Assembly: GCA_020137815.1 (NCBI GenBank) | Contig: CM035361.1 | Coordinates: 1,922,001 to 1,986,000 of the forward strand | Length of the DNA stretch: 64,000 bases | Source: Hormiphora californensis | Taxonomy: Eukaryota > Animalia > Ctenophora | Direction of reading: 5' to 3' | Part shown: positions 35,961-54,565 of the stretch, piece by piece | Layout of the letters: each line of letters begins with the position of its first letter | Position numbering within the stretch: the stretch's first letter is position 1 | The notes under the pieces: generated by a model | Databases searched by the model: none | Told to the model about the DNA's origin: nothing | What the model saw: the letters and a program-made list of their open reading frames with translations, nothing else | Made by a program: the position numbers and the translations under genes

Positions 35961-38654
35961 ATGACAGAGATTTTAGCAGACAACTTCAAGTACTCAGTCA
36001 ACAATGTGGACATGGAGTGCAGGGTGGTCCTAACCGAATCTGGAGTTGGGATTCACGAGGGTACACGAGATACATGCATATCGTATGAAGTACATTCATC
36101 TTAGCGATGTGATAGGTAAGGCAATCAACTCTGAGTGACTACTGCACTATAGTAATAAATATGCTCTCTTGTGTAGTCACTTTTTGAGGGAGAGGGAGCT
36201 AGAGAGGGAGGCATTGAGAGGAAGATAGGGAAAGGAAGAGAAGTGATAATTAATGATAGTTAGAGATATATATGTAGAAATGTGTATGAGGATAATATGG
36301 GTATGATATTACCACTACACGTTTAGCATGTGATAATCTTATTCTTGTCTTAGCAATCCAATAGGCACTGAGGGCACTTGGTTTAGTTGACATTGGTACG
36401 GTGTAGTTGATATTGATCTTCTTGTTGGGCGATCTTGGGTTATCGCACGGGTCAAAGTTGAGGGGTTTATTTGAGTTTGGCTAATAGTAACATATATTAT
36501 ACCGATTACGTCTCAACTCACAATTGTTGTTGGCACTTTGCCCAACTGCACTGTTACATCAGTGATCTGTATCGAGATATATCACGAGTGCGTAAAATGA
36601 GAGAGTCGCAACTCTAATGTTGCGTTATTCCGTATGTATAGGCAAATCTGAACATCATGATTGGGGAGATTTTCTCAAGCGGAGTTTATAATAGCTTTAC
36701 TGGTTACTTCCAATTCTGACTGATTTGGTATCCCGGTACCAGGGTTATGGTACCCTGTTGACCACAAGCTATATTTCACAAGAAGCTGGGCAATTCCACA
36801 CACCTCCATATTAGCTGGCATACTTGGTAAAACCAATTAACTTCTTATAACTACTTAATTGACTAAGCTTAGAATTTCTCAGGTGCTAAGGTCCACTACG
36901 GGGCACGGGATCAGGTCTTCCTTGTTATACACTACCTACCACTCACCAAAAACAAGTAAGTATCGCTTGCTCTGCCAAACCCTCACAGAGCGTGTGATTT
37001 TATAGATAAAATGCAGTGTAAGCTACACAAACCAACCCTTCGCGTTTGTTGTGGAATGTGCAAGTTTAGCCAACTAGGTTTATACAAGGTTTATAATACT
37101 GTGTACTAACACGTCCAGTACTTGGCTAACTTTACAAGTATGACAATATGTGCAAACTAGTCGCCCTTACACCTCTAAAGTTGGGTAGAAAAGTATGGTT
37201 GTTCTTGGACACATATGTTTACCCTGCCATGGTATACCATTCTGTTCATTTGCACATTAATGTCTGCAGAAACCCCCACACATGACATGAAATCTGAAGT
37301 GTAACAGGGGAAGGTCGAAACATGAACCATTTTCAGCTACCCACACGAGTGTTAGCTCTTCATTTGGACCCCCACACATGTCACATAATGTGTAAAATAA
37401 CAATTCACATGGTATTCCTAATTCCATTCTCCACTACCCACACAAGTGTTATCTCTTCATCTTCACACTACAAATATCTATCTGCAGAAACCCTCACGCA
37501 TCACATAATTATTCACATACATTATCTCCATGTACACCTATAAAACAATTCCACCCAGGTTCAATGGGAAGTTGATGAGGGTAAAGAAGCAGGTGGTACT
37601 ATGTGCTACACAACATGAGACCCAACACGCTAACGTGAGACAGTGTGTTAGGTGGAAGAGTGCTGTGAAACGAACCATCTTCGGGTAAGATCAGATTTAT
37701 ACTACTTACTAGGAGCTGGGAGGGAAGTTATGTTACTCCAATTCCCGTTTACTAAGTACGTGATAGGAGAGAAAGAAAATCATATTCTGATAAGAGACTC
37801 CTACCGCGGTATAATCGATGTGACTGTCTCGAAATTGTAAAGTGGCCTACTTGAAGGCGATAACATAAAGGTGAAAACTAATACACCTTCTTTGGTTTTC
37901 CACTGTTTTATTATTTCTGCAGGCCCAGTGAAACAAGTGAGACGAAATGTCGAGAGCGAAAGTACCTTATATTTGTGAATCCTAAGGGCGGGAAAAAGTT
38001 GGCTAAAAAGATTTGGCTCAGCACCGGTAATTATGTTCATTACCTTTTATTCCCGTTTATTCCAAACTATTCATGTTTTATATTCACTTACATAAATATA
38101 TTTCAACACCTTAAACATGTTATTAATTTTACTTGTAACCTCTTTGTCCCACTAATTTCACCCCCTCTTGTAACCTCTTTGTCCCACTAGTACAGCCACT
38201 ATTTGATCTTGCTGGGATTGAGAGTGAGGTTGTATACACGGAATACAGTGGTCATGGAAGGGATTATATTAAGAGCTGTGAGAATCTAATGGATTATACT
38301 TCTATAGTAACTGTATCAGGTAATTAATTAATTAATTGATAATTGGGTAACCCATTTCTGGTAGGTTTGATAATTTACTGTTAACCCTTTGGGGACGATA
38401 AGCCCCCTGTCGAGAGAATTCTCTAAAACTTTCTGGAGACACTTACGTTATTACTTATTAGCTATGCCACGTTCGTTACTATGATTTTTAGAGAATGTAT
38501 AATTGCTTGGACCGTTTTGAAACACGCTAATTGCATGCAATTACACAAACATAACATGCTACTGCAGCAGCACAAAGAATTTATACTCTTTAGAGTCTCT
38601 TAATAACTGTTCCTTCTGACCCTCCCTATCTTTCTCTGTATGTCTATTGTTGAC

Positions 38655-38738
<84 letters not shown>

Positions 38739-41700
38739 TGTGTACTTATGTATCTCTGTGTTTGTTCTACACGAAACTGTTGTTTATGTTGGTTTCCCTA
38801 TTAGTCACTTCCTAGCTTACACTTTTGACACTAGATTAGAACACACATAGAGATATAGTTTGAGAGAAAGATGTTGAGAGAAATTGGGAGTCTAAAGCCT
38901 TCAGAATTATTTGTGTTTACCTATTTTTCTGTCTAGGTGATGGGATCGTCTTTGAAGTATTTAATGGGTTGATGAAGAGAGACGATTGGGAGACTGCCAT
39001 TAAAGTACCACTATCAATCATCCCTGGAGGATCAGGTGAGAAACTCTTTAAAGCACCTATCGTTCATTAACCCTTAACAAATTCCCATAAATTGAAAAAA
39101 AAACTGGATTTAAACTCCAGTTTGCCGTATCTTTAGAAAACCTAGCCATGACCTCACTCCTCACCAGACCTTACTGACTCAATATATTGATAATAATTTA
39201 CAGAACAGTCTCGCCATAACAGCTTCAAATCATGTGGTCAATTGCCATTCACACGCCGCTGTTTTCAGTGTTTCGGCGAAGACGGTACTTAGCCTTCCCC
39301 AGCAGAGCATGTTTGTAGGGCGCGGGGTACGAAGTCAGGAGAGAGATGCGCAGAGTGTCAACCGCGCGCACACTTCATGGAGAGTTTCGCTGGATCATAT
39401 CACAACCGCGTGACGGTGAAGTTATTATTTTGAAATTGCTTTAGCTGAATTGAAAGGATTTGGGTGCCGTAAACAGCTTGGTACTAGAGTTAGGAACAAT
39501 AGGGATTGATTATTAAGGGCCCGTCGGTTTTGCGTTTTGTCTATCCTGGAAAGTTATAGTCAGGAAGCAAGTTAGGGCGCGGTCGTGACCAAGGAAGGGA
39601 TGGTCGGACCGCCCTAAAACCGCTTTACGTTTGGTAACAATCAGCACCATTTCAGGAGTTTCTGTGAGCATTTTGAAGTGGGCACAACCAGCCAGTCAAG
39701 AGTTATGACGAAAAAACAGCTAAAAATGGCCCTTTTTATGACATTGTTATTCTGCTGGCTGAGAGAGCTTTAAATAATGAGTATGGCTCTGAAACTTCTT
39801 GTGAGGGTAGGAAAATCAAGCAAATTAGGTGCCTCTAGGGTATCGGATTGCTTGCTCTCACTAATGTCCATTTTTTTTCAACTGTTCACCCCCCAAAGTC
39901 GTGCGCGGAATTGTTTTGCGCGTTTATCACATGTTAACGTGTAGCGCGCGCAGCGTAAATTAAAATTATACCAAAACTAATTGAAATTAGTAGGCCGGAA
40001 AGGTTGCCCTATGATTTGAGCTACCTTTGCCATCGTAACATTCACGGGGTACAGTCAGGGTATAACCGATGCTTCTTCTACCTTCAAAAGTGAATGTACT
40101 GGTGCCAAAGGTAGCTCAAATCATAGGGCAACCTTTCCGGCCTACTAATTTCAATTAGTTTTGGTATAATTTGCATCATTTTTGGGATTTTTTATCCATT
40201 TAGATGTAGTAGAACAGGCAAGGAGAGGATGGAATCGCGAATTTGCAAAATTTTCATTTTTGACGTCATTTTGACGTCATTAAATGACGTCACGTTGTTA
40301 TGACGTCATATTGATGACGTCATATCATTGGGATTACCTAGATGAAGATACTGACCAAGTTTGAGATCGATTGGATGAGATTTGAGTCTGCTATGGCGAA
40401 AAAACCCATATCGTCATATCTATTTTTAAACAGTCATAACACTTTAGACGCGTTTTAAGACCCTTATACGTCTAGTTTTGAAAATTCGCAATATAGTTTC
40501 TGAAAGTTCAGACAATTCTCTTTCCATGATATAGCCTTCGATTTTCGATTAGAATCCGTCTTCAGGGTGTAAAATGAACTCAAAGAATTTTAGTCAGAGT
40601 CTGAAAAATGACGACTTTAAGACGTTCTGTAGGACGTTCCCGGCGATGAAAAGGGACCTCACATCAACTAATGCACACACATCCAGTAGATCTACCAGCT
40701 GTGAAAACGAGAAGTTTCTATCTCTTTTCGTTTGGCGTGAATATGGTTTATAAAAAGCGTCTCTCCTACGCGTGCGCGTGCGCGCGCGCGTGCATATGTG
40801 TTACACTGAATCTAGGGCAAATGGGACCTGTCTGTAACTTCAGTTCCAGATGAGATAGAGACTTGAAATTTTGAACTTAAGTTAATGACCCCGAGCCGGG
40901 TATACATTCCAAATTTCAAGTCAAACGGATGAATGGGAGCCATGCTATAGCCTTCTGAAATCTGGGTTTTCAGTCAAAACACCCATAAAACGTATAACTG
41001 CGTTTCTGGCGGCGCTTTGCTGTTTGGGGGAGGGGGAATGGCAACCTTTGCGCTTGCCAGCGCAGTGATATCGCACGCGCACGAGTTGAGGGGTGAACAG
41101 TTGAATAAAAATGGACTTTACTTGTATGCTTTAATCTGACCACTAATTGGGTAAATCTCGTCAAGTGATCACTTCACAAGCACGATTCCGTGAAAATTGC
41201 TAACTTCTCACGTGTTTGAGCAACTCTAATTAGACAACCATGAGATATACATAGTAACTTCAAAAAAAATTGTCTTCAATTTCAGACATTTCCCTACCCT
41301 CACAAGAAGTTTCAGAGCCATACTCATTATTTAAAGCTCTCTCAGCCATCAGAATAACAATGTCATAAAAAGGGCCATTTTTAGCTGTTTTTTCGTCGTA
41401 ACTCTTGACTGGCTGGTTGTGCCCACTTCAAAATGCTCACAGCAACTCCTAAAAATTGTACTGATTGTTACCAAACCGGTTTTAGGGCGGTCCGACCATC
41501 CCTTCCTTGGTCACGACCGCGCCCTAACTTGCTTCCTGACTATTAGGACTGGGATAGTTATCATGCTGCTGGGATTTATTCCATCTTTTTGATAGTCGAA
41601 TTGCGTGACCCGCTCCCCCCGTATGAATAATGTACATTGAATATATTCATTAAATATCACAGTTACGGTCTAGACTTGTAAAGCAATAAAGCATCCCAAA

Positions 41701-44700
41701 TGTATACGTCCTCGTTTTAAATCCCTGATTGAGAGAAAATATATATGGCCGATCTGATCAAATCTGACCAACTATGTACAGTAACAATTGCAAAATGATA
41801 CGAGATTTTATTGTTTACTCAAGTTTAATGTTGTAACACAATTGTCAGAACAATAACTCGTCGAGCACTTTACCAGGAATCCCTTCCAAATCAAAGTTAC
41901 ATTAGCAATTCTCTAATGATAAATCGGTTATCGTGGTCAATAAATTTGGGAATTTTCACTGCCTATATTATTACAACCGATTTATATACATTAGCATTAT
42001 CAATGACTGAAGGAATTAGGAAATGGTGCAAAGGTCTCCTGGAAAAAAAATAACCTCATTCGTGGGAAGGAGGTGGTGGAAGCACCAGGGACCACTGAGA
42101 ATTGAAATTCAATTTGTTGAGTTTAGAAGTGATGAGCGAGGAAAGGACAGTTGAGTTGAAAGGTTGTCATTTGTTTGATAGCCTCAATTATTTTTCAAGT
42201 TTCAAGTTTCAATGACTATACGGCCCAGACAGGGCAACTGGGCCAGCTAGTGATATAAACTGAACACTCCTGAGCATCAGAGCGGTATATATCCTGTATA
42301 CCCCGCCGACCCCGCCTGAGCGCACTGTCGCGACATTTGATAATTAAATTGGGGTCTGGGGCTGCCAGACAGGATATACCTCTGACTGAGAGTCTCAGAA
42401 ACTATCCTGATATTCTCAAGCACTTTGACATTAACGCATTAACGCATGAGATTAAAGGGTCTAAAAAGCTAATTTTTGGGGACGTCCAAATTTTTGGGGA
42501 TACAGTCGGGGATAAAGTTGGTACCGAATGGAGTGAACAGAAACATGATTGGACAATAATATTTCCCCGATCATTTTGTCATTTTCCTGCCCTCAAAAAA
42601 ACAATTATCAGTGAGATGTTTTGACAGGACCCTGGACGGCTTAAATTCTCTCTCTCCTAAAAATAAAACATAATATGGGCTGTGTCCAATACGTACTATG
42701 TAGTCAACTATCACGCGATATATCTTGAATCTTCTTCTTTTAGCTAAATAGTTCATTTAATTTGATTTTTTTTTCTAAGCTTATTTTTAACAAATAGGAA
42801 GCGACAGAGAAATAGGGGGAGAGATAGATAGCGAGATAGAAATTAAAGAAGAGAGATATAAAGTCTTCATGGTGATAATCACATTTCAATCTACTTATAA
42901 TAATCACACTTCAATATACTTATCTGTACATCAATCCAGTTAATCTGGGCCATTGCATCGTTAGATTGTTAGAAGGCCCAACCACGAATGTATAGAGAAA
43001 GAGGGAGTGGAAGTGAGAAAGAACGAATGAGAGGGAAATTGCAAAGTGCTTTTTTAGCACTTTGCAATTTCTCTCTCATTCGTTCATTCTCACTTCCAAA
43101 CGATAATCATAATATTTCCGTTATAAAAGCATCACTTTTGACGTGTCCAAAATATTTTTTCAATCATTGCTTTTTTCTGAATACTGTTTCATACTACCGT
43201 TTCATTTTACTTACAGTAGTTTTATATTGAGTGTTCCCTTTTTCCTAAAGTGGTGTAAATTTCCTTTGAAATCCGAATTGGAAGCCGCCATAAATATATT
43301 TCAAAGATCGTTCACTCTCAAGCTGCTCTCTACCATTTACTTGCATTTGACCAGGCAGCTCCACCTTGTTGTGCTACTCAATAACCTTTACAATTGTTAT
43401 GTTACCTTCCACAGATCTCAAACATGCGAGGTCCAATTGGACCATTTAAGAACGGAATTCACCCTAAACCTATGCGATGCCCGAAAGACGTACTACAATC
43501 CTCATGCTGCCCTCCCTTCGCTACCATCCCTTCATCGACCTTCTATATCACGTTAACTGCTGTTAACCTCGCCCTCGCTCCCATCATCCTTATCCTAAAC
43601 CGATGGGTTATCCTCTACCATACATCCAGAAAGGGTAACCGCTCCCTGGCCAGTAAACTGTATATTCATCTAGCGGTATGGGATTGTGTAACCGCGGTAA
43701 CCGCCCTTCTTCACGGGGGTTACATGATATTTTGGTTACTAGGTAACCAGGACTCTATTGTAAACTCGGTCGCCGTGGCAACTGTCTATGTAGCTACGAC
43801 TGTCAGTGTTCGGGGGAGTGTCTTTGCGAACGTGGTCCTGTCCGTTGTACGGAGTGTCAACATTTCAAAACCCTTTTATATGATCCGTAAGACTCTTCTA
43901 ACGGTTGCCATGGTAGCAGTACCAATGACTCTAATTCCCATCGCTGGAGTTGACCTTTGTTACTTTTTCTCCTTTGAGTATGATACCACACCACTATCAG
44001 GCTGGGAATATCGACACTATCACCGACAATTGTTCCTTGGGCCAGGCTTAGGGGTGGGATTGTTTGGCTTTATAATGAAAACCAAACACCATCATTTCTC
44101 AATGAGTGCCGTTATGCACCATTTCTCAAGTGTTTTCTTCCACCTTGCAACCTCTGTTTGTTTGGTTTGTCTAGTGTTTCAAACACGAGCAATATTGAAG
44201 TACAGGAAGAGGCTACAGAAAAATCGAGAAGAATCGGGAGGAGGAGGAGTTTCAGGAAGGATAAAGTATTCTGTTCAGAGCGGTAGCGTGCAACCGCCTG
44301 ATGTTGCGGTTAGGGCAATACAGTGGGGCATTGATCTAGTCCCTCCTTCTGGGATTGAAAGAAATTCAAGAACGCGAGTTGCTACTCGGAGGAGAGATCA
44401 GCGATCATCGGTCACACTTGGTGATCTTGCAATTCCTAGTGTTACTGGAAGTGGACCAGCTAGGAAACAAGGCTCTTTTGAAAGGAGAAGGATTGAAGAA
44501 GAAGGCTCTTTTGAAGGGAGAAGAATTGAAGAAGAAGGCTGTTTTGAAGGTAGAAGGGTTGAATTTGAAAGGAGAGGGATTGAACTTGAAGATCAAGGTG
44601 AAAGGACGAGTGATGAAGATTGTTTTGCTGGAGTTGAGTTAGTAAGATCGACATCTGAAGAGTCTGAAATCGACTGCAGTGGCAGTGAGGTTAAAGCATC

Positions 44701-46416
44701 AGTTATAGTTCACCAAAGTCGTTCGAATGTCATCCCGTCTTTACGGAAAAAAGATGCAACTTTTGAGGTATCAGACTCTTTTGAGGATCATGGCACAACA
44801 GCCTCTCCTCGGTCCTCATCTTTTTCATTATTCAGATTATCTTTAGCGTCCTCCGATTTCTCTTCCTCATCATCATTATCTGTGTTTCCTCGCTCCTCGA
44901 CCTCAACTTTCTCTCAAAGATCACTTTCCTTGTCCTCATCCGATGAGCAAGGTTCATTATGTGATGATGACCACGGCATTGAACCAATTCCCTCATCCCA
45001 ATTTGAGCAGCCTGCAACTAGTGATGACACGGTGCCTCAAGTTGAGCCCAATACAACTCTTCCACATATCCGATCCAATATCACTATCACCCTCCTAACC
45101 CTCTTCTTTATTATTACAAACTCTGTGTACACCGTGGTAGTGTCCAGTACCATAAGCAATGAACCTAGACGGAAATCTGGCTTGAATGCGGATACTTTGG
45201 CGTGGACGTATATAGCAAGTAGTGTGTGCCCCTTGATGAGTTCTCTAGTTAACCCCCTGGTGACAGTTCTAATGGGAAGACATAATGAATTGTGGAGGTT
45301 TATCAAGGATGATGTTTTGAGAATGTTTGGGAAGTTTTTGAAAATTGATCCCAATGGAATTTCCAGCTCTGGTCAGTAGGTATGTTTGGTACACGTAATT
45401 CCACTCCGTTAGACCCTAATAACGATTAAATAGTCAGTGACTCCGTTAGTAGAGTGTTTCTAGACCACAGTCAGACACTAGTAATTATAGTCATAACCAT
45501 TTCTAAAGCTGGTTCTTCTTTGGAGCAGCTGGTCCGTGTTAAGGATCTGACGGTTTACGATAAAGACTTCCTCGGATTCGCCCTTGCTGGGGCGGGGGGA
45601 GGGGGATTAAAGAGCTGTGTGCATTTCAATTGCAAACCTTCACGACTTAATATTTTGACATTTATATTTAATAGATCTGGCTGTAACCCTGAGATGCTTG
45701 TGCTGAAACTGACATTCCTTTTATCATTAATGAAATGTGTCAAAATTTTAATTTACTGGAGGCTTGGCTGTTCCCAATTCCTTCACATCAAATCTTAATG
45801 GTTTGGATCTCGTGTAGCTGACAGCTCTGGTTCAATCAATCGGGATCATTTATTGAGTTCGTGTTACGAAAGCAGGATCGAAAGACATGGATATTCTACG
45901 GAAATTCTTCGTGGGTGACATACAGCAACTTTGCATTTGTGAATTTTTCAAAACGTGAACCCCGGTCGGATTTCTTGAACACGTATTTTTGACTTTAGGA
46001 CGATATATCTAAGACTTGGAACGTCAATCTTGCAACCAAAATGTTCGCCAGACAATTCTCTAGAACACTGGTTTTTGTTAGAACCATTTTGACCAATTTT
46101 TCGATAAGTTTTGATTAGTTTGACGGAACCCGATCATGACCAGTAATCGCAGGTCACGCAAAGACAGTGGGACACCCTGTATATTGTCGATGTTAATCGA
46201 TTAACATGGGCTATTTAGCCCGCTGTGTCACCCACGAAGATTCGTAAAACTAATACGAACTCAATGATATCATTATTTCAAATGCCATGGTCTGATAATC
46301 CTAGAGTGAGGGTGAGGGACCCGTATCTTCCCCATAAGAGACCAACTTACAAGAGTACCCGGGTCACTCACTCACTCACTCTCTCTCTCTCACACTCTCT
46401 CTCACTCTCTCTCTCA

Positions 46417-46460
<44 letters not shown>

Positions 46461-49400
46461 TATTGGCTACTACCTGGTTCTTCTCCCCATGAAATGTAAC
46501 AATTTTTTCAGGTAACGGTTTGTGTGCAGCTATTCTCCACCAATCTGGTGTACCGTTGACGCTGATTGACGCTGTTTTTGTGGCCATCCGGGGATCATCA
46601 ACTCCATTGGATCTGGTTAAAGTTGAACAGGTTGGTTTGGTTTGGTTTGGTTTGGTTTGAATTTGGTTTGGTTTGGTTTGAATTTGGTTTGGTTTGGTTT
46701 GGTTTGGTTTGGTTTGGTTTGGTTTGGTTTGGTTTGGTTTGGTTTGGTTTGGTTTGGTTTGGTTTGGTTTGGTTTGGTTTGGTTTGGTTTGGTTTGGTTT
46801 GGTTTGGTTTGGTTTGGTTTGGTTTTTAGCACTATGGTTCTAAAAACTACATACATATATGAATCAAATGAATATTATTGCTGCTGCAGCTATTTTCTAG
46901 CACATTAAAAAATATCTTCATAGCTCCATTCGTGGAAAGCAGCACCCCATATCGATGCAGTATGGGGTGCTGCTTTCCAGGAACGCAGCTATAAAGAATA
47001 AAGATATTGCAATTTTTTAATGTGCTACAAAATGGGGTCCCCACCTTGTACAGATGGTGTTTCAGGCTGCATCTAGATATTCTAGAACAACCTTTATTCG
47101 ATCTCAATCTTTATCTCATTAAACTGCAACTGTCCCCCCCCCCCCTAACTGTCCATAAACAATTAATAAATCATCTTGATAAATTTGTACAAGGTATTAT
47201 AGACGGGTGGGCCTGGGGTAGTTAATACATATATATCATTGTTTCCAATGTTCCAGTGTCATGATACACCCACCCACTCAACTGATGTGAATTACACTGG
47301 AAACAATGATTATATACACGGTTCCATTTGAACTATCATAAAATGTCTTATATATCTGATTCATCCCATGAAATAATATTTATACATCATGAACTACTTT
47401 ATTTATACATCATGAAATAATATCTTCCTATAATATTTATACATCATCATGAAATAATCTTCCTCAGGAGGGAACTGAGGTGTGGTCCTTTCAGTCTGTA
47501 TCTTGGGGCTTTTTTAGCCTTATCGATATAGAGAGCGAGTCTTACAGGTCATACATATTACTTGATTAAGTGATGCATTCTTGTTAGGCATGAAACGTGT
47601 GATTCTGCTTGTATACAATAATTCCGTGATGTGTGCAATAAATTATACTTATTTTATATTCATACGGGGAAGGAAAATGGAGACCCCCATAAGACAAGTG
47701 TCACTCACTACATATATGGCGAATTCCCCAAAGTTATAATAGGTTGTCATGCATCGTGGGTAGGCGATAGTCGATATATCGACTATCGCCTGCCCACGAT
47801 GCATGACAACAATCTGAGTTACGATCTATATACTCAGATCGTAACTCAGATCGTACTACAGAATTATAAAAAAATATATTTTTATAATATTATCGGAAAT
47901 TGAATGTATATATTTTCCTGAATTTTTATAGACTAAAATAATGATCGTACCCCAGTATTCAAATTTGTCTGTGAGTTTGTTTATTTGTTTATTTGTTTTC
48001 ACTCACATGTCTCTGTATATTTTTCAGGAAAGGGACACCGTATGGTCATTTCTATCTATTGCGTGGGGTCTACTCAGTGCGGTCGACATTGAGAGCGAGA
48101 GACTTCGGTAAATTCCTATACTTGATAACTTTAACATGAAGCATTTTTTGTATGTTCACTGTTCACATGCCTATTATAGCAGCTGTATCACCCATGTTAT
48201 ATCCCTATAAAAGCAGCTGTATCTTGCCTTGTTAGGCCCTGTCTCGCCATATGCACGGTGAAACCTCTTTTACAAGATGTGTTAGGGTTAGAACAAGCTG
48301 GATCCCTGTTATAGCCCTGTTATAGCACCTTGTTGATTGAGTAATTCATCAACCCCCCTCCTCTTATTCAACAAGAAGCAGCTGTGTGTTCTTTAGAATT
48401 ACAGAACTGCATTATTCAATGGAATATAATGTCTCGCCTTGTGAGAGAGTACCACACGGCATACCATTAAAAGCACATTGCTATTAGCACTTTTAAGTTT
48501 CACAGCCCACATACAAATATTATTTGAAATACAGCTGGCTATGCAACAAACAGACGTCAGTGCTATGCCAAGAGAGTGAAATTTGTAAATGTTTAACATC
48601 AAAACATGATACAATATGGTGTTATGAACAATCTGGGGCCTTTTGAAGCATATTATAATTGTGGGATTCTATACGGGCTGGACCACATGTGTACACTGTA
48701 AAACATGTGGGTCAGCCCAGCCCGTACATTAACTAACACAGTAGACTAACACAGTAGACAGTTGACAGTTGGTTGACTAAAGTGTTGGGCTGTCAGTACG
48801 ATGGGTCTGATGGGTCTGACTGCAGTTGTTAGGTCCATCGTCAGTGAGGCCAATCTTCTCACTGAAATATTATACTTTCTGTTTCGTGTTCTGTGTGTTG
48901 TGTCTTTCTTGCACAGATTGATACATATTCAATGAAGCATGTTAAGTGTTTGTCTGTTTGTGCCCTGTTTGTGTGATACTAAATGTTTATTAAATAGATA
49001 TGTATCATACAATGGGGGATGATAGAACGAGAGAACAAAAGAAGACGATATTGTTCTAATCGTCTCCCAATTATAGTATGATTGCATATCTAACCACTAA
49101 ATCTAACTATTAAATCTAACTACTACACTATCTAACTATAATACTGCTAGGTGGATGGGGGAGGCCCGGTTTACTGTTGAAGCGGTTAAAAAACTTGTCT
49201 CCTTCCCGATAAAAAGTGGGAGAGTGTGGTTTAGTAAAATAGAGCAGGATCAGACGGCCAGTTCAGAAGTTCAGGATGCCACGACGTGTACTGCAGAAGC
49301 TAATGGTAAGTTATATTGACACATGGTACAGTCGGAGGGTTCTTTCCTTTAAATCGGAGTGTCCTTTAAATCGGGGTCAAATACTGGCAATTTCCTATTT

Positions 49401-49889
49401 CGGAGGAAGATTATCCTGCCGTTAAATCGTGGTCCGACTGTATTGATCCCAGTTATCCTGACTTAATATTTTGGTTATCCTAGCTCGACTATCTCTCACG
49501 AAAATGTCAAATATACGGGTTATCCAGTATATCCGGGTTATCCGGGATTATTTATCCCCCTAATACTAGCTTCCATTTCGATGAAGCATATATTTGAGTG
49601 TTTTCTCTCCTCATATGCTATACGATCTCTCTCTCTATCTCTCGATCGCTCTATCGGCATATGCTCTCGAATCTCTCTATCTCTTCTCTCTCTCTCAGAT
49701 AGAGAGGAGATGGCTCTTGCAGAGAGACGCTCGCTCTCTCGCTAGCGAGAGAGAGCGCGAAGACGAGCGAGCGCGAGAGGAGAAGAGAGAGATGGAGAGA
49801 GAGCGAGACGAGCGAGCGATGAGAGAGACTGCGTCGCGATAGAGGATCGATCTCGCTAGATCTCGCTTATCTATCTACTATCTTCGAGA

Positions 49890-49986
<97 letters not shown>

Positions 49987-52900
49987 GCAGAGGTAGTTGA
50001 TCAAGCTGATGAAGTAGTGGATAAGGGATCACATAAACAACTCTCCAAAATAACGGAGAGGGTGAGGAATGATAGTTGTGGGAGCAACTCTGATGATGTT
50101 GAGTAAGTTAATTGTTTAATTAATTAATAACAGTAAACAAGTAACAAGTTATGTAAACAAATATTAAGTACACAATGTGTACAATTAGTTTTTTATTTTC
50201 AAAGTCCCCGATATTATTCCTCCCCTATTTTGTGCAGAACAGAACTGGACCCATCCTTTATTTTTATTTACACTCCCCTCCCCCATTTTGTGCAGAACAG
50301 AACTGGATCCTTCCTTTGATTTCTCCGCTTTGAACGAGTCAGATTCAGATGACGCTGAGGTATGAATAAATAATGTCGACTAAATTTGTCTTTACTTTCG
50401 AGATTAGGAGCATGGCATAATCTGCTGAAATTATTTTTTGAAGAGTTGTATAAATCAACAACTTCTTGTATCCCCGTTTCAGAGTTTTATTAATGAGCGA
50501 ATACCAGACAGATCCCGGACCGTTTCAGATTTACCCGCTAACTCATCGGTAAGATGTCCAATACCATTCTAACACCCAGTACCATTTTAAATTACGGTTA
50601 TTACACCTCAAACTATCGGACTTATAATTGTGGGAAGAGTTTCTGCACGCTATTAAATATGACATCGAGGTTTGACTGAATTAATTTTAAATTTAACTCA
50701 CTACATTGGAACGCGTGACTGAATATCTCATCCACCCACCAGAACTCAGTTGAGTGTAAGTGCAGGACCTGTTCGCCACCACAATATATAGGGGATGATG
50801 ATGTTGGGGCTCGTCAGAAACTGGTGGAACAAATCGGACTGAAAGACAAGATACCTGATGATTGGACACTGGTTAGTAATTTGTAATTACAGTCGGACCC
50901 CGATTTAGGGACACCCTTGGGGGAAAGGTTAATTTCCTATATCGGGGGAAAAAAATCCTGTCCCTAAATCGGGGTGCCACTAAATCGGGGGGCCCTAAAT
51001 CGGGGTCCGACTGTAATTATGTAATTATTAATTAATTAGTTAATTAAATTTAGTATCTAATTAAACCAATTTTTGTTTGGTATCTCTTTTTTTTATTATT
51101 TCGAAACTTCTCGAATTCTTACCTTCATTTAAATTATTTGTATCTACGTCAGTAACTCAAAAGACAGGAACCACCCCATGTCAAATGAATGTTTCTCCCA
51201 GTAATACAATTATAGGAGAGTTTTTTATTTGACTTTGACGTAGGCGACTTCCAGTTCCACGATTTGAAATGTCTCAAACTATTTATTTCTCAAACCATTC
51301 TGGATCCTCAATACATATTCAATAACAACCCAAGTGACCACTGACCACCCCCTCTCTCACCAACTGCACCCAATTAATCCTCCCCTCTCTTACCAACCAC
51401 CCAATTAATCCTCCCCTCTCTCACCAACTGCACCCAATTAATCCTCCCCTCTCTCACCAACTGCACCCAATTAATCCTCCCCTCTCTAACCAACTGCACC
51501 CAATTAATCCTCCCCTCTCTCACCAACTGCACCCAATTAATCCTCCCCTCTCTCACCACCCACCTAATTATTCCTCCCCTCTCTGTCAGGTTGACGGCAA
51601 CTTTGCGACCATAATGGCATTTACCCTAACCCACCTTTCTCTGGGATACCAGTGTGCATCTAACTTCCGATTAGACGCCGGTTTTGTCTACCTTATGCAC
51701 AGCGGGGGCGGCTCAAAAAAGGTAAACCAATTAACTAACTAATTAATGTAATTATGTTTCAGCTGGAAGGTCGGTTTGCGTGTGTGACTGCGTTTTTCCA
51801 CTCCCACCTGAGTTTCACATACCCCGTGACACCCTACCTAAGGTTGGATTGTGGGTACATGCTGCTGATGTGGAGCGAGAGCAATAGTTTCGAGAGAACG
51901 GTAGACTGCTGCGTGTTTCATCTCATACAGGTTTGTAGCTATCCCCCGTCAAAGAAATTAATTTCCCAGTGCGCAAAAAATTCGAAGTTCGAATTATGGG
52001 TTTTGATTTTCATCTTGATTCTCGAGTTTTGATCTCATAATTGTGCGTTTGTTGAGTGTATCTCCGGAGAAATAAGATAAGAGAGAGATAAGAGAGAGAT
52101 AAGAGAGAGATAAGAGAGAGATAAGAGAGAGATAAGAGAGAGATAAGAGAGAGATAAGAGAGAGATAAGAGAGAGATAAGATAAGAGAGAGATAAGAGGG
52201 ATGCCTGAAACTAAACCCCCATAAAAAAGTCGCTTGGCAAATTCCCTCGTCGCTCGGCAATTGGTTCGGCAACAACAGGTGGTTTGCCGAGCCAGTCGCT
52301 CGGCTAATCAAGGAAGTCGCCGTGTTTTCACCGCGTTCTTACAGAAAAAGTACATTTTTTCAGCACTTTTTTTCAAAATCTCCTGCTGAAAAATACAAAG
52401 TGCTGAAAAAATGTGCTTTTTCTGTAAGAACGCGGTGAAATCACCGAGATTTCCTTGATTAGCCGAGCGACTGGCTCGGCAAACCACCTGTTGTTGCCGA
52501 ACCAATTGCCGAGCGACGAGGGAATTTGCCAAGCGACTTTTTTATGGGGGAAAGGAGCATCTTTACAGCACCTTAGTTTGACTTTGAGAGCCACAAGAAA
52601 ATAACCCTGATAAAATAGATGGGATAATATGTCCCCCCCCCCTCCCCTCCCCGCCCCATATTTAAATATATGAATCTGACTATTTGAGCAAGGTGGGTAG
52701 GTGGTAGTACCCACCTTTCTCAAAGCCAAGTAGCCAGAGTCATTAACCCAGCAACCTTTGATATATAGAACCGATCGCAAATATTTTATTCGATTTCGAG
52801 GAAATAAAATCTTGCTAGATAAAACTCTATCTATAAAGAAAATTTGCATAAGATTCAATTTCAATTTGAAATTCAATTTCAATTTGAAATTTAAAGTTGA

Positions 52901-54051
52901 AATATCATACATACTAGTATAGGGGAACAGGGGAACTAGGGGAACAGGAACTAGTTAAACCATGAAATAGCTCTGAAATTCAGAGCTATTTCATGGTTTA
53001 ACTAGTATAGTTCCTGTCTGTGTCGATTGGAGGTTGATATTTATCTAGACTTGAATATCTTCCCCTAGTATGTATGAACAGGGGAACTAGGGGAACTGGA
53101 ACTAGTTAAACCATGAAATAGCTCTGAAATTCAGAGCTATTTCATGGTTTAACTAGTATAGTTCCTGTCTATGTCGGTTGGAGGTTGATATTTATCTAGA
53201 CTTGAATATCTTCCCCTGGCCTAAAGTCGAATTTTTTAATCAAGGGACAGGGGGCCGCGCGTTCAGAGGGGTCGCGCGGCTTTGTATTTGCGCGTGATAA
53301 TCGAGATCAAGTTCCTGGCAATCTTAAGACTTGAACCCGGAAGCGTTGGAAAGATAATTTTAAGACCTTTTCAACGCAACCAAGATCGAGTCTTTATCTT
53401 ATCAGGAACAGAAGATATGAGCAAATACGTTTAGCACGCGCAAAAAGACTTTTATAAATGCGCGGCCCCTGTCCCTTGATTAAAAAATTCGACTATAGTA
53501 TGATATTTCAACTTTAAATGTCGTACGAGATACAGATATTTAAGGTATCCTCATAGTGTATTAGTGTATGGTTGTGCAATTGACACCGATTAGCTGAACT
53601 TAATCAACTCCAACTGATCTCTACCCGCAGGACTTTTTGAGGTTGTTGATACAAGACTGTACTCCCGAATCCAATGATACTCGAACAATACACTTCGAAA
53701 AGGTTGGTAACTGCTAGGTTGACAGTATTGAGCCTAGAATATATACGTCATGTTTAGTCTGTATTTCACAATCATGGCAGACCATATTGAGCTTGCAAAC
53801 TCCAAAATGACCAAAAATCATGAAACCCATATACTTCTCGATACTCAACAACTCGATACGGTAGCTAATTCCGGTCTCTCATCTTGAATCTATTCATTTC
53901 GCAGGTGAGAGCATTTCGTTTGGAGCCTGAGATAGCAGAGGAGGGTGCTTATGTGACGATAGACGGTGAACTGGTGCCCTATGAAGCACTCCACGCGTGT
54001 ATCTACAAGGGCCTTGCTCGTGTCATGTGCCTGTCAACCTCCGCTAGATAA
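35961..54051 (+). CDS. SPHK: Sphingosine kinase (SPHK1/2 family), multi-exon
   Basis: Exons 35961/36085-36115, 36883-36955, 37559-37684, 37923-38026 (FVNPKGG), 38191-38319, 38937-39035 (GDGIVFEVFNGLMKRDDWETAIKVPLSIIPGGS), 46512-46630 (GNGL), [47468-47547 or 48028-48107], 49151-49305 (RWMGEARFT), 49991-50102, 50296-50359, 50483-50548, 50743-50871, [51590-51721 or 51763-51900], 53631-53702, 53905-54051 (AFRLEP...IDGE). Start uncertain. Confidence 0.92.
39556..41543. mobile_element. Composite TIR element (~260-bp inverted arms, internal inverted repeat ~39963-40172)
   Basis: atagtcaggaagcaagttagggcgcgg... / ...ccgcgccctaacttgcttcctgactat. Confidence 0.75.
43424..45379 (+). CDS. Single-exon rhodopsin-class (class A) GPCR with very long third intracellular loop, nested in an SPHK intron
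   Basis: Seven hydrophobic segments; TM1 ..ILN, TM2 LAVWD, TM3 LSVVRSVNISKPF, TM7 SSLVNP; ATG 9 nt after a ccacag acceptor. Confidence 0.88.
   Translation: MRGPIGPFKNGIHPKPMRCPKDVLQSSCCPPFATIPSSTFYITLTAVNLALAPIILILNRWVILYHTSRKGNRSLASKLYIHLAVWDCVTAVTALLHGGYMIFWLLGNQDSIVNSVAVATVYVATTVSVRGSVFANVVLSVVRSVNISKPFYMIRKTLLTVAMVAVPMTLIPIAGVDLCYFFSFEYDTTPLSGWEYRHYHRQLFLGPGLGVGLFGFIMKTKHHHFSMSAVMHHFSSVFFHLATSVCLVCLVFQTRAILKYRKRLQKNREESGGGGVSGRIKYSVQSGSVQPPDVAVRAIQWGIDLVPPSGIERNSRTRVATRRRDQRSSVTLGDLAIPSVTGSGPARKQGSFERRRIEEEGSFEGRRIEEEGCFEGRRVEFERRGIELEDQGERTSDEDCFAGVELVRSTSEESEIDCSGSEVKASVIVHQSRSNVIPSLRKKDATFEVSDSFEDHGTTASPRSSSFSLFRLSLASSDFSSSSSLSVFPRSSTSTFSQRSLSLSSSDEQGSLCDDDHGIEPIPSSQFEQPATSDDTVPQVEPNTTLPHIRSNITITLLTLFFIITNSVYTVVVSSTISNEPRRKSGLNADTLAWTYIASSVCPLMSSLVNPLVTVLMGRHNELWRFIKDDVLRMFGKFLKIDPNGISSSGQ
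46631..46825. repeat. (GGTTT)n pentanucleotide microsatellite starting at a splice donor
   Basis: Direct reading. Confidence 0.95.
47468..47547 (+). CDS. SPHK alternative exon 1A
   Basis: 80 nt, phase 0->2, EGTEVWSFQSVSWGFFSLIDIESESYR; weak donor gtcata. Confidence 0.8.
48028..48107 (+). CDS. SPHK alternative exon 1B
   Basis: 80 nt, phase 0->2, ERDTVWSFLSIAWGLLSAVDIESERLR. Confidence 0.87.
50890..51013. mobile_element. pogo/Tigger-like MITE family (other copies 49329-49440, 56661-56759, 61885-62053)
   Basis: TA|cagtcggaccccgattta...taaatcggggtccgactg|TA. Confidence 0.85.
51345..51585. repeat. 33-bp tandem repeat immediately upstream of SPHK exon 2A
   Basis: cccctctctcaccaactgcacccaattaatcct x ~7. 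Confidence 0.9.
51590..51721 (+). CDS. SPHK alternative exon 2A
   Basis: 132 nt, phase 0->0, VDGNFATIMAFTLTHLSLGYQCASNFRLDAGFVYLMHSGGGSKK. Confidence 0.85.
51763..51900 (+). CDS. SPHK alternative exon 2B
   Basis: 138 nt, phase 0->0, LEGRFACVTAFFHSHLSFTYPVTPYLRLDCGYMLLMWSESNSFERT. Confidence 0.8.
52073..52197. repeat. (agataagagag)-type short tandem repeat
   Basis: Direct reading. Confidence 0.9.
52216..52550. mobile_element. Palindromic MITE with CCC termini
   Basis: cccccataaaaaagtcgcttggcaaattccc / gggaatttgccaagcgacttttttatggggg. Confidence 0.8.
52914..53498. repeat. ~170-bp direct duplication with an internal palindrome, followed by a TIR element 53221-53498
   Basis: actagttaaaccatgaaatagctctgaaattcagagctatttcatggtttaactagt occurs twice; agtcgaattttttaatcaagggacagg / cctgtcccttgattaaaaaattcgact. 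Confidence 0.7.
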
Positions 54052-54565
54052 TAATGAGACTATCAAAACACGTGGTACTATCACGTGATATATAGTGACT
54101 CTCGTGTGAAGGATGTTATCATATGTTTAGGTCAAAGCTGGACAGTTATTGACAGCTTGTTGACTCGGTAAACCAGAATTGTATGTGAATATGTTGTGAG
54201 ATAATATTATTAATAAGGAGAGATTGGAAAGAAGCAAATTTATTGTTAATTGTGTTGTGATTTGTGAATGTGAATATTATTGACACTGACAGTCACCCCT
54301 CACTCACAGCTAGTGCTATAACAGTCTGATGTGCTTGTACAGATGAATGCAAGTACATATAATGTATTGATATTAAACACTGATAATGTATTAACACTGA
54401 AATTTTGTACTGTAAAATGTGAATCGATTCTTTTAGTGAACTGCACGGCAACTTTTCACTGAAAAGTTGCCGTGCTATGCAGAGCTGAGCCAGAACGCGA
54501 CGGCGTACTTGGTTACGAAGTCACCCCTATTATTGCATATAGCTAGCGCAGGGGGAATTCCATTA

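What the first reader, a model, noticed from the sequence alone, without database searches (positions are those of the whole stretch)
51590..51900. Sphingosine kinase mutually exclusive exon pair 2, separated by only 41 nt
Seen: homologous phase 0-0 exons (DGNFATIMAFTLTHLS...RLDAGFVYLM and EGRFACVTAFFHSHLS...RLDCGYMLLM). Frame cannot exclude double inclusion. However, the spacer 51722-51762 is 41 nt (next shortest intron here is 66) with a ctaac branch-point motif ~14 nt from the upstream donor, the classic steric mechanism. Known: this strand region (SK1 FVLVLALLHSHLGSEMF) forms the other wall of the lipid channel.
Basis: partly seen in the sequence, partly recalled or inferred. Interest (0 to 1): 0.85.

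Follow-up and report, generated by a model that had tools for sequence, protein, structure and literature searches.

The report
Alternative pocket exons, comb-jelly sphingosine kinase
A comb-jelly sphingosine kinase gene carries two old, interchangeable copies of the exon that lines its lipid pocket, only 41 bases apart, which is shorter than any ordinary intron sampled in this genome, so they probably cannot be spliced to each other; this is a known kind of alternative splicing found in an early-branching animal.

Summary
Exon A (51590-51721, 132 nt) and exon B (51763-51900, 138 nt) are homologous (17/42 residues, E 9e-11). Both are phase 0-0 and a 41-nt GT..AG spacer with CTAAC at 51735-51739 separates them.

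They belong to the genome's only detected sphingosine kinase gene (35961-54051, + strand). The genome fits Hormiphora californensis.

**RNA evidence.** Metatranscriptome contigs from one study join A to the next exon (53631), skipping B, in two runs. One contig joins B to the same exon. No contig reaches upstream of B or joins A to B.

**Conservation.** Bolinopsis microptera RefSeq isoforms carry A or B, never both. B-type exons of three species form one clade, so the pair is old.

**Protein location.** The segment aligns to human SphK1 residues 254-297, which hold reported inhibitor (PF-543) contact residues of the lipid pocket.

**Steric mechanism.** It is plausible but unproven. About 98 introns sampled in this genome have a shortest exact length of 68 nt. 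A known myosin exclusive pair here has a 52-nt spacer. However, a Bolinopsis-like contig has a 93-nt spacer.

**Verdict.** New member of a known kind, of moderate interest. The scan noted other exclusive-exon pairs in this genome, including this gene's pair 1.

The parts
50743..50871 (+). Constitutive exon upstream of the pair (...ECKCRTC...GLKDKIPDDWTL), donor CTG|gttagt
   Evidence: tblastn with Mnemiopsis and Bolinopsis SphK; boundaries read from the DNA. No RNA junction seen.
51349..51584 (+). 33-nt x 7.3 C/T-rich tandem repeat that runs into the polypyrimidine tract and acceptor of exon A
   Evidence: Tandem Repeats Finder, 93% matches, score 409; sequence
51590..51721 (+). Exon A, 132 nt, phase 0-0 (VDGNFATIMAFTLTHLSLGYQCASNFRLDAGFVYLMHSGGGSKK)
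   Evidence: Sequence. Contigs in runs X1 and X2 cover it with 0 mismatches and join 51721 to 53631. 75% identical to the Mnemiopsis A-type segment.
51722..51762 (+). 41-nt GT..AG spacer between the two exons
   Evidence: Sequence. Shorter than all of about 98 sampled introns of this genome. No contig shows it removed or retained.
51735..51739 (+). CTAAC branch-point-like motif, with its A at 51738 (+17 from the A donor, 24 nt from the B acceptor)
   Evidence: Sequence only; function inferred. A CTAAT sits at a similar distance upstream of exon A's acceptor.
51763..51900 (+). Exon B, 138 nt, phase 0-0 (LEGRFACVTAFFHSHLSFTYPVTPYLRLDCGYMLLMWSESNSFERT)
   Evidence: Sequence. One contig in X2 covers 51770-51899 (6 mismatches) and joins 51900 to 53631. 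It groups with the B-type exons of Bolinopsis and P0007.
53631..53702 (+). Shared downstream exon (DFLRLLIQDCTPESNDTRTIHFEK), the acceptor used by both A and B
   Evidence: Junctions 51721->53631 and 51900->53631, and 53702->53905
53905..54051 (+). Last coding exon (VRAFRLEPE...DGELVPYE...) with its stop codon
   Evidence: Junction 53702->53905 in X1 and X2; tblastn
51027..51045 (+). AT-rich element in the upstream intron, complementary (18 of 19) to spacer 51729-51747; a possible exon-A looping stem
   Evidence: the repeat finder pair I9. Only two other places in the window match the spacer element. Duplex energy about -17 to -18 kcal/mol, roughly the best 0.1-0.3% of windows. Weak evidence; conservation not testable.
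47468..47547 (+). Pair 1 exon a (80 nt, 3n+2) of the same gene, given as context
   Evidence: tblastn and boundaries; matches the pair-1 segment of Bolinopsis isoform X2
48028..48107 (+). Pair 1 exon b (80 nt, 3n+2) of the same gene, given as context
   Evidence: tblastn and boundaries; matches the pair-1 segment of Bolinopsis X1 and X3

Best explanation
Exons A and B are an ancient tandem duplicate of one coding exon of the only sphingosine kinase gene detected in this comb-jelly genome. Each encodes the same strand-loop-strand unit of the C-terminal lipid-binding domain. That unit aligns to human SphK1 residues 254-297, which include reported pocket contacts L259, L261, L268, M272, A274, F288 and V290. 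One of the two exons is chosen per transcript, giving kinases that differ at aligned pocket positions 259 (T/C), 261 (M/T) and 274 (C/V). Both exons are 3n and in phase 0, so the reading frame and nonsense-mediated decay cannot police double inclusion. The likely safeguard is the spacer. Every possible branch point for exon B's acceptor, including CTAAC at +17, lies within about 30 nt of exon A's donor. U1 on A's donor and U2 on B's branch site therefore cannot assemble together, and the 41-nt interval cannot be removed as an intron. If the upstream donor (50871) pairs with A's acceptor, A's donor must go to 53631. If it pairs with B's acceptor, A is removed inside the intron. Shown here: homology, frames, spacer length, both exons spliced to 53631, A-without-B transcripts, and conservation of both types. 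Inferred: strict exclusivity in this species, branch-point use, the steric block, and any difference in substrate preference.
For: Anatomy and homology. Junctions 51721->53631 (X1 and X2, 0 mismatches) and 51900->53631 (X2). Bolinopsis microptera isoforms X1 and X2 carry the B-type exon and X3 the A-type, none both. Exon tree: ctenophore exons 97/97, B clade 94/92. Two of the three differences listed for the B contig are synonymous third-position changes. Pocket mapping: and PMC10599685. AlphaFold models of the two Bolinopsis isoforms give the same strand-loop-strand in the variable segment, and SphK1 is the best structural match (TM 0.82-0.85). Spacer versus intron sizes: about 98 introns in myosin and kinesin genes, shortest exact lengths 68 and 79 nt, none at or below 60. 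Other introns of this gene are 123 nt or longer. The Mhc2-type exclusive pair of this genome has a 52-nt spacer (cluster known from Mnemiopsis, PMC3912159). Precedents: about 50-nt 5'ss-to-branch-point threshold (PMC7969005); C. elegans 3n exclusive exons with introns too short to excise (PMC4165533).
Against: No read or contig shows the upstream exon joined to B, so B-with-A transcripts are not excluded. Contigs cannot show that the A-B join is absent. The B junction rests on one 160-nt contig with a 30-nt anchor and 95% identity, from an environmental sample of one study. The minimum spliceable intron of this species is estimated from about 98 homology-inferred introns in two gene families, not from RNA. 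Animals with introns of 40 nt or less exist. A Bolinopsis-like contig (P0002) has 31 in-frame codons (93 nt) between A and B, so exclusivity there would need a donor-proximal branch point or another mechanism. Functional difference between the isoforms is pure inference.
Confidence: 0.6

Rival explanations
1. The two exons are used exclusively, but the choice and the block on double inclusion come from something other than the spacer's length. Candidates are a competing RNA structure, such as pairing of 51027-51045 with spacer 51729-51747 that loops out exon A, or trans-acting repressors. On this view the 41-nt spacing is just the footprint of the original tandem duplication.
For: The Bolinopsis-like contig has a 93-nt spacer, yet the RefSeq isoforms there are still A or B. 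A 19-nt complement to the spacer sits in the upstream intron, with duplex energy in the top 0.1-0.3% of windows. Both donors lack the +5 G, as is typical of regulated exons.
Against: The stem is AT-only and built on a palindromic TTAA-type motif. With about 36 windows in that intron, its chance level is roughly 5-10%. It would also bury exon B's own branch-point motif. A structure or a repressor does not remove the geometric problem of a 41-nt intron in a genome whose sampled introns start at 68 nt.
Confidence: 0.22
2. The 41-nt interval is an ordinary, spliceable short intron, and B is a cassette exon added after A. B-containing mRNAs would then encode a kinase with the strand-loop-strand unit twice.
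For: The frame allows it. The only B contig does not reach upstream of B. Introns of about 40 nt are spliced in some animals (PMC4165533; PMC13644364).
Against: None of about 98 sampled introns is below 68 nt. Bolinopsis isoforms never hold both exons. A duplicated pocket wall is hard to fit into the SphK1 fold modelled. The A and B clades have each been conserved as alternatives.
Confidence: 0.08
3. Exon B is a decaying or essentially unused duplicate in this species, and only the A form matters.
For: A-type contigs were seen in two runs with perfect identity, but B in only one contig at 95% identity. The Pleurobrachia and Mnemiopsis protein models hold only A.
Against: B has an open frame with intact AG and GT sites. 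It is spliced to 53631 in RNA. It has B-type orthologues in at least two other ctenophores that form a supported clade. The codon-position pattern is that of coding sequence.
Confidence: 0.07

Closest known systems
C. elegans mutually exclusive exon clusters with intervening introns too short to excise (egl-15 5B/5A, let-2 9/10, bet-2, gly-5, gly-6; PMC4165533)
   Same: Homologous tandem exons whose lengths are all multiples of three, so the frame cannot police them, separated by an intron below the species' minimal intron size.
   Different: There the absence of the doubly included mRNA was tested experimentally, and the species minimum (about 40 nt) is known from genome-wide data. Here both points are inferred. 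The spacer (41 nt) is compared with a sampled minimum of 68 nt.
Alpha-tropomyosin exons 2/3 and OGDH exons 4a/4b (steric block by a branch point close to the upstream donor; Smith and Nadal-Ginard 1989, as cited in PMC7969005)
   Same: The branch point for the downstream exon lies nearer to the upstream exon's donor than the roughly 50-nt threshold for joint U1 and U2 assembly.
   Different: In those genes the intron is long enough and only the branch point is displaced, with a long polypyrimidine tract. Here the whole intron is 41 nt. No branch point was mapped here.
Bolinopsis microptera 'sphingosine kinase 2-like' isoforms X1-X3 (XP_063692264 to XP_063692267)
   Same: Orthologous gene with the same two exon pairs. 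The isoforms carry the A-type or the B-type segment, never both, and three of the four pair-1/pair-2 combinations are modelled.
   Different: These are database models with no published description found. In a Bolinopsis-like contig (P0002) the spacer is 93 nt and open in frame, not 41 nt.
Mnemiopsis Mhc2 'cluster-0' mutually exclusive exons (PMC3912159)
   Same: A ctenophore tandem-duplicated exon pair. Its counterpart in this genome (G000:C3:7946062-7946254 and 7946307-7946523) also has a sub-minimal spacer, 52 nt.
   Different: Those exons are 3n+1 (193 and 217 nt), so the frame also prevents double inclusion. It is a different protein, and the pair covers myosin loop 1 and switch 1.
Vertebrate SphK1 and SphK2 paralogues
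   Same: Two kinase forms that differ at lipid-pocket residues within the same segment (this recollection about SphK2 was not tested here).
   Different: Vertebrates use two genes. This comb jelly appears to have one gene and varies the pocket by exon choice.

Membership tests
Mutually exclusive exons derived from tandem exon duplication | Adjacent exons that are homologous, of similar length and in the same phase | tested here: met
   132 and 138 nt, both phase 0-0, 40% identity, E 9e-11
Mutually exclusive exons derived from tandem exon duplication | Each exon is spliced to the same flanking constitutive exons | tested here: inconclusive
   Downstream: both are joined to 53631. Upstream: no contig reaches 50871 from either exon.
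Mutually exclusive exons derived from tandem exon duplication | Exactly one of the exons is present per mature mRNA | tested here: inconclusive
   A-without-B is shown in two runs of one study. B-without-A is not shown in this species. The Bolinopsis isoforms hold A or B only. Contigs cannot prove absence.
Mutually exclusive exons derived from tandem exon duplication | Both copies are conserved in related species | tested here: met
   A-type in Pleurobrachia, Mnemiopsis, Bolinopsis and others; B-type in Bolinopsis and P0007. The B clade has 94/92 support.
Steric-hindrance type of mutual exclusion | Distance from the upstream exon's donor to the downstream exon's branch point is below the spliceosome's minimum | tested here: inconclusive
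   The geometry is met: the whole intron is 41 nt and CTAAC is at +14 to +18. The threshold for this species is only estimated: 0 of about 98 sampled introns below 68 nt, and about 50 nt in vertebrates (PMC7969005).
Steric-hindrance type of mutual exclusion | The branch point is mapped experimentally within the short interval | not testable with these tools
Steric-hindrance type of mutual exclusion | Lengthening the spacer allows double inclusion | not testable with these tools
   This needs a minigene experiment.
Sphingosine kinase (DAGK_cat lipid kinases) | DAGK_cat catalytic domain with the GDG motif | tested here: met
   PF00781 matches window 38921-39055 (29.6 bits, over the cut-off). Exon text ...VSG|DGIVFEVFNGL...GGSGN. 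The Bolinopsis orthologue matches PF00781 at E 1.8e-25.
Sphingosine kinase (DAGK_cat lipid kinases) | Closest solved relative and fold is SphK1 rather than DGK, AGK or CERK | tested here: met
   The orthologue scores E 2e-40 against SphK1, versus 7e-17 for AGK. The Foldseek top hits are all SphK1, TM 0.82-0.85. This was tested on the Bolinopsis orthologue, not on a joined model from this window.
Sphingosine kinase (DAGK_cat lipid kinases) | Phosphorylates sphingoid bases | not testable with these tools
   Needs an enzyme assay.

The most novel reading that the evidence does not exclude
Comb jellies may routinely use sub-minimal spacers (41 nt here, 52 nt in Mhc2, against a shortest ordinary intron of about 68 nt) as a hard-wired lock on exclusive exon choice. 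In this single-copy kinase, the lock on pair 2 together with the frame-policed pair 1 would then yield up to four lipid pockets with different sphingoid-base preferences. That would be a splicing-based counterpart, hundreds of millions of years old, of the vertebrate SphK1/SphK2 gene pair.
Probability: 0.25. Interest if true: 0.6.

Novelty: new member of a known kind. Interest (0 to 1): 0.42.

Why it matters
Exclusive choice between duplicated exons is a compact way to tune a protein's active site, and steric locking by a very short intron is its simplest enforcement.

- **Evolutionary reach.** Finding the same arrangement in a ctenophore, a lineage at or near the base of animals, shows this logic is either very old or easily reinvented.
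- **A testable model.** It gives a clean natural case: a 3n exon pair, a 41-nt spacer, and a relative with 93 nt.
- **Sphingolipid biology.** One gene may make several pocket variants where vertebrates use two genes. This can be tested directly by expressing the natural isoforms.

Tried and rejected
- **Exon-level PDB searches.** Exon A gave no hit and exon B gave only chance hits. I mapped the segment through the full-length Bolinopsis orthologue instead.
- **Searches for short transcript fragments.** The search for homologous proteins with the upstream exon ORF and with exon B found no candidates.
- **The search for related loci.** With an alignment it returned only L008, a spliced transcript of a more distant ctenophore with a single exon form.
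- **The look-up of encoding contigs.** DNA of the Bolinopsis, Mnemiopsis and Pleurobrachia loci could not be read, so the 93-nt spacer is known only from an in-frame ORF.
- **Sequencing runs.** No runs of the species itself were served, only three environmental metatranscriptomes and one tiny run, all held as contigs. Junction frequencies and absence could not be measured.
- **Third exon copy.** None was found in the flanking introns.
- **Other inverted repeats.** The large inverted repeats in the downstream intron (154-nt arms at 52216-52550, and others) look like transposon palindromes, not selector elements.
- **Apparent 26-50 nt gaps.** Those seen between profile matches in myosin and kinesin genes proved on inspection to be introns of 68, 79, about 90 and 113 nt.
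- **Literature.** Searches found no ctenophore intron-size statistics and no description of these isoforms.
- Natural Bolinopsis isoforms served as proxies.

Full report
**1. What is in the sequence**

On the + strand, an acceptor (...cctctctgtcag|) opens a 132-nt exon at 51590-51721, closed by AAG|gtaaac. Exactly 41 nt later (51722-51762, GT..AG, ending atgtttcag|) a 138-nt exon runs from 51763 to 51900, closed by ACG|gtagac.

- Both exons are whole numbers of codons in phase 0.
- Their translations align without gaps over 42 residues with 17 identities (BLASTP E 9e-11).
- Against the whole window each exon finds only the other (E about 1e-6; next best above 0.5). There is no third copy.
- Identity by codon position (0.48, 0.62, 0.36) is what diverged coding sequence gives.
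- CTAAC is at 51735-51739, with its branch-type A 17 nt into the spacer and 24 nt from its end.

The one exception is 'next shortest intron is 66': in my model of this gene the next shortest intron is 123 nt.

**2. The gene and the organism**

The window is G000:C12:1922001-1986000 of a 110.7-Mb, 45-contig genome. Earlier notes call it a comb jelly. Its size and contig number fit the Hormiphora californensis assembly, 110 Mb in 44 scaffolds (PMC8527503). This identification is an inference.

tblastn with ctenophore sphingosine kinases lays out a gene from 35961 to 54051 with about 15 coding exons. It includes:

- the DAGK_cat core at 38.9-39.0 kb;
- a first duplicated pair at 47468-47547 and 48028-48107, 80 nt each (3n+2), 480 nt apart;
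- the exon 50743-50871 (...IPDDWTL);
- the pair studied here;
- a 72-nt exon at 53631-53702 and the last exon from 53905.

A search of the whole genome with the Mnemiopsis protein finds only this locus plus the acylglycerol kinase gene, so it appears to be a single-copy gene.

**3. RNA evidence**

No run of the species itself was served. The search returned three environmental metatranscriptomes and one tiny run, all held as contigs. Laid on 48410-54399:

- Two runs of one study hold contigs that cover exon A with no mismatch and join 51721 to 53631 (GT..AG), skipping exon B. One of them continues through 53702->53905.
- One 160-nt contig in one of those runs covers 51770-51899 of exon B (6 mismatches) and joins 51900 to the same acceptor, with a 30-nt anchor.
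- Of the three differences listed for that contig, two are synonymous third-position changes and one changes His to Gln.
- No contig reaches upstream of either exon, covers the spacer, or joins A to B.

So both exons are real spliced exons that share a downstream partner, and A-without-B transcripts exist. B-without-A is not shown, and contigs cannot show absence. This counts as one study.

**4. Relatives**

A profile of the two exons, searched against 1.8 billion proteins, found only ctenophore sequences.

- NCBI's Bolinopsis microptera isoforms are decisive for the pattern. X1 has the pair-1 b-type segment with B. X2 has pair-1 a-type with B. X3 has pair-1 b-type with A. None has both A and B.
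- Pleurobrachia bachei and Mnemiopsis models carry A.
- P0007 is an ORF with a B-type exon from another species.
- P0002 and P0013, whose B exon is identical to that of Bolinopsis, are unspliced ORFs. They read A, then 31 in-frame codons (93 nt), then B.

In a tree of the segment, ctenophore exons are monophyletic against six other animals (97/97). The B-type exons of this genome, Bolinopsis and P0007 form a clade (94/92). The duplication is therefore old, predating the split of cydippid-type and lobate ctenophores, and both copies have been kept. The short spacer, however, is not conserved as such.

**5. What the segment encodes**

Natural Bolinopsis isoforms served as proxies.

- X3 matches human SphK1 chains at E 2e-40. 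Its A segment aligns to ...DEDFVLVLALLHSHLGSEMFAAPMGRCAAGVMHLFYVRAGVSRA, which is residues 254-297 after removing the 20-residue tag offset of 4L02.
- That stretch holds L259, L261, L268, M272, A274, F288 and V290. These are listed among PF-543 contacts in a docking study (PMC10599685).
- In this register A and B of this genome differ at positions 259 (T/C), 261 (M/T) and 274 (C/V). They agree at 268, 272, 288 and 290.
- AlphaFold models of X1 and X3 (pTM 0.74) give the same strand (463-475), loop and strand (497/498-503) in the variable segment. B's five extra residues fall in the loop before the next helix.
- The best structural matches are all SphK1, TM 0.82-0.85.

Any effect on substrate preference is inference.

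**6. Is 41 nt too short here?**

No intron statistics for ctenophores were found, so I sampled introns directly.

- Exon-by-exon Pfam matches for myosin heads and kinesin motors gave 95 neighbouring exon pairs with contiguous profile coordinates, plus three closer pairs with overlapping coordinates.
- The smallest cases were read in the DNA. Their introns are 68, 79, 92, 95 and 113 nt, and about 90-100 nt in a myosin II gene.
- None of about 98 introns is 60 nt or shorter. Many cluster at 80-120 nt.
- The other introns of this gene are 123 nt or longer.

The only sub-68 interval met was again between duplicated exons: a myosin pair at G000:C3:7946062-7946254 and 7946307-7946523 with a 52-nt GT..AG spacer. 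It matches the Mhc2 'cluster-0' exclusive exons described in Mnemiopsis (PMC3912159).

Published work supplies the precedent. It places the threshold for joint U1/U2 assembly at about 50 nt between donor and branch point (PMC7969005). In C. elegans, five clusters of 3n-length exclusive exons have introns too short to be excised (PMC4165533). The steric reading is therefore well motivated but rests on inference.

**7. Other possibilities**

A 19-nt AT-rich element in the upstream intron (51027-51045) is complementary to spacer 51729-51747. Its duplex energy is about -17 to -18 kcal/mol, roughly the best 0.1-0.3% of windows. It could loop out exon A, but it is low-complexity, marginal by chance (roughly 5-10% for that intron), and would bury B's own branch motif.

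Double inclusion through a spliceable 41-nt intron, and a decaying exon B, are each unlikely for the reasons given under the rival explanations.

**8. Verdict**

This is a real, ancient pair of alternative exons in a lipid-pocket wall. Use of one or the other is supported by RNA contigs and by orthologous isoforms. The steric lock is the most economical mechanism (my confidence in the whole account is 0.6) but is unproven, and the 93-nt spacer in a relative warns against treating it as the conserved mechanism.

It is a new member of a known kind. The isoforms already exist as database models in Bolinopsis, and I found no publication on them. The scan has noted several other exclusive-exon pairs in this genome, including this gene's pair 1.

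Noticed in passing
L010 (G000:C3:7944700-7950400), exons at G000:C3:7946062-7946254 and 7946307-7946523: [quoted passage not shown] A 52-nt GT..AG spacer separates them, which is also shorter than any sampled ordinary intron. It matches the Mnemiopsis Mhc2 'cluster-0' exclusive exons (PMC3912159).
   Followed up: partly
window 43385-45376 (+): A 664-codon open frame with hydrophobic, membrane-protein-like stretches lies inside the 7.5-kb intron 6 of the kinase gene, on the same strand. It has no Pfam match. Nested intronic genes are reported as common in Hormiphora (PMC8527503).
   Followed up: partly
window 51349-51584: A 33-nt unit (CCCCTCTCTCACCAACTGCACCCAATTAATCCT) is repeated 7.3 times and runs straight into exon A's polypyrimidine tract and acceptor. 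Each unit carries CTCAC/CTAAC-like and CCAATTAA motifs, and CCAATTAA recurs at the start of the 41-nt spacer. It may affect how well exon A's acceptor is recognised.
   Followed up: no
window 51027-51045 versus 51729-51747: A 19-nt AT-rich complement (18 of 19) links the upstream intron and the spacer and would loop out exon A. It is statistically marginal and low-complexity.
   Followed up: partly
window 47468-47547 and 48028-48107: Pair 1 of the same gene: two 80-nt (3n+2) homologous exons 480 nt apart. Here the frame, and hence nonsense-mediated decay, can police double inclusion or skipping, unlike pair 2. The Bolinopsis isoforms show three of the four pair-1/pair-2 combinations.
   Followed up: partly
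window 46631-46830: A (GGTTT)n-type microsatellite begins directly at the donor of the exon ending ...LVKVEQ (46630) and reads as a long GLVWF repeat in all frames. It produced spurious extensions of tblastn matches.
   Followed up: no
window 52216-52550; 52925-53217; 50884-51019: Transposon-like palindromes sit in the introns flanking the pair: 154-nt arms at 97% complementarity, a 151-nt tandem unit with internal hairpins, and 33-nt arms. Metatranscriptome contigs hit 50888-51013 at high depth, joined to 49345-49382, most likely from other copies of a repeat.
   Followed up: no
P0001 (Pleurobrachia bachei model EP00116_P010251): The public Pleurobrachia model has three extra residues (VIV) between ...DDWTL and VDGNF, and its N-terminus matches intron-derived sequence of this window (50454-50549). 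It is probably a mis-predicted model rather than a real difference.
   Followed up: no
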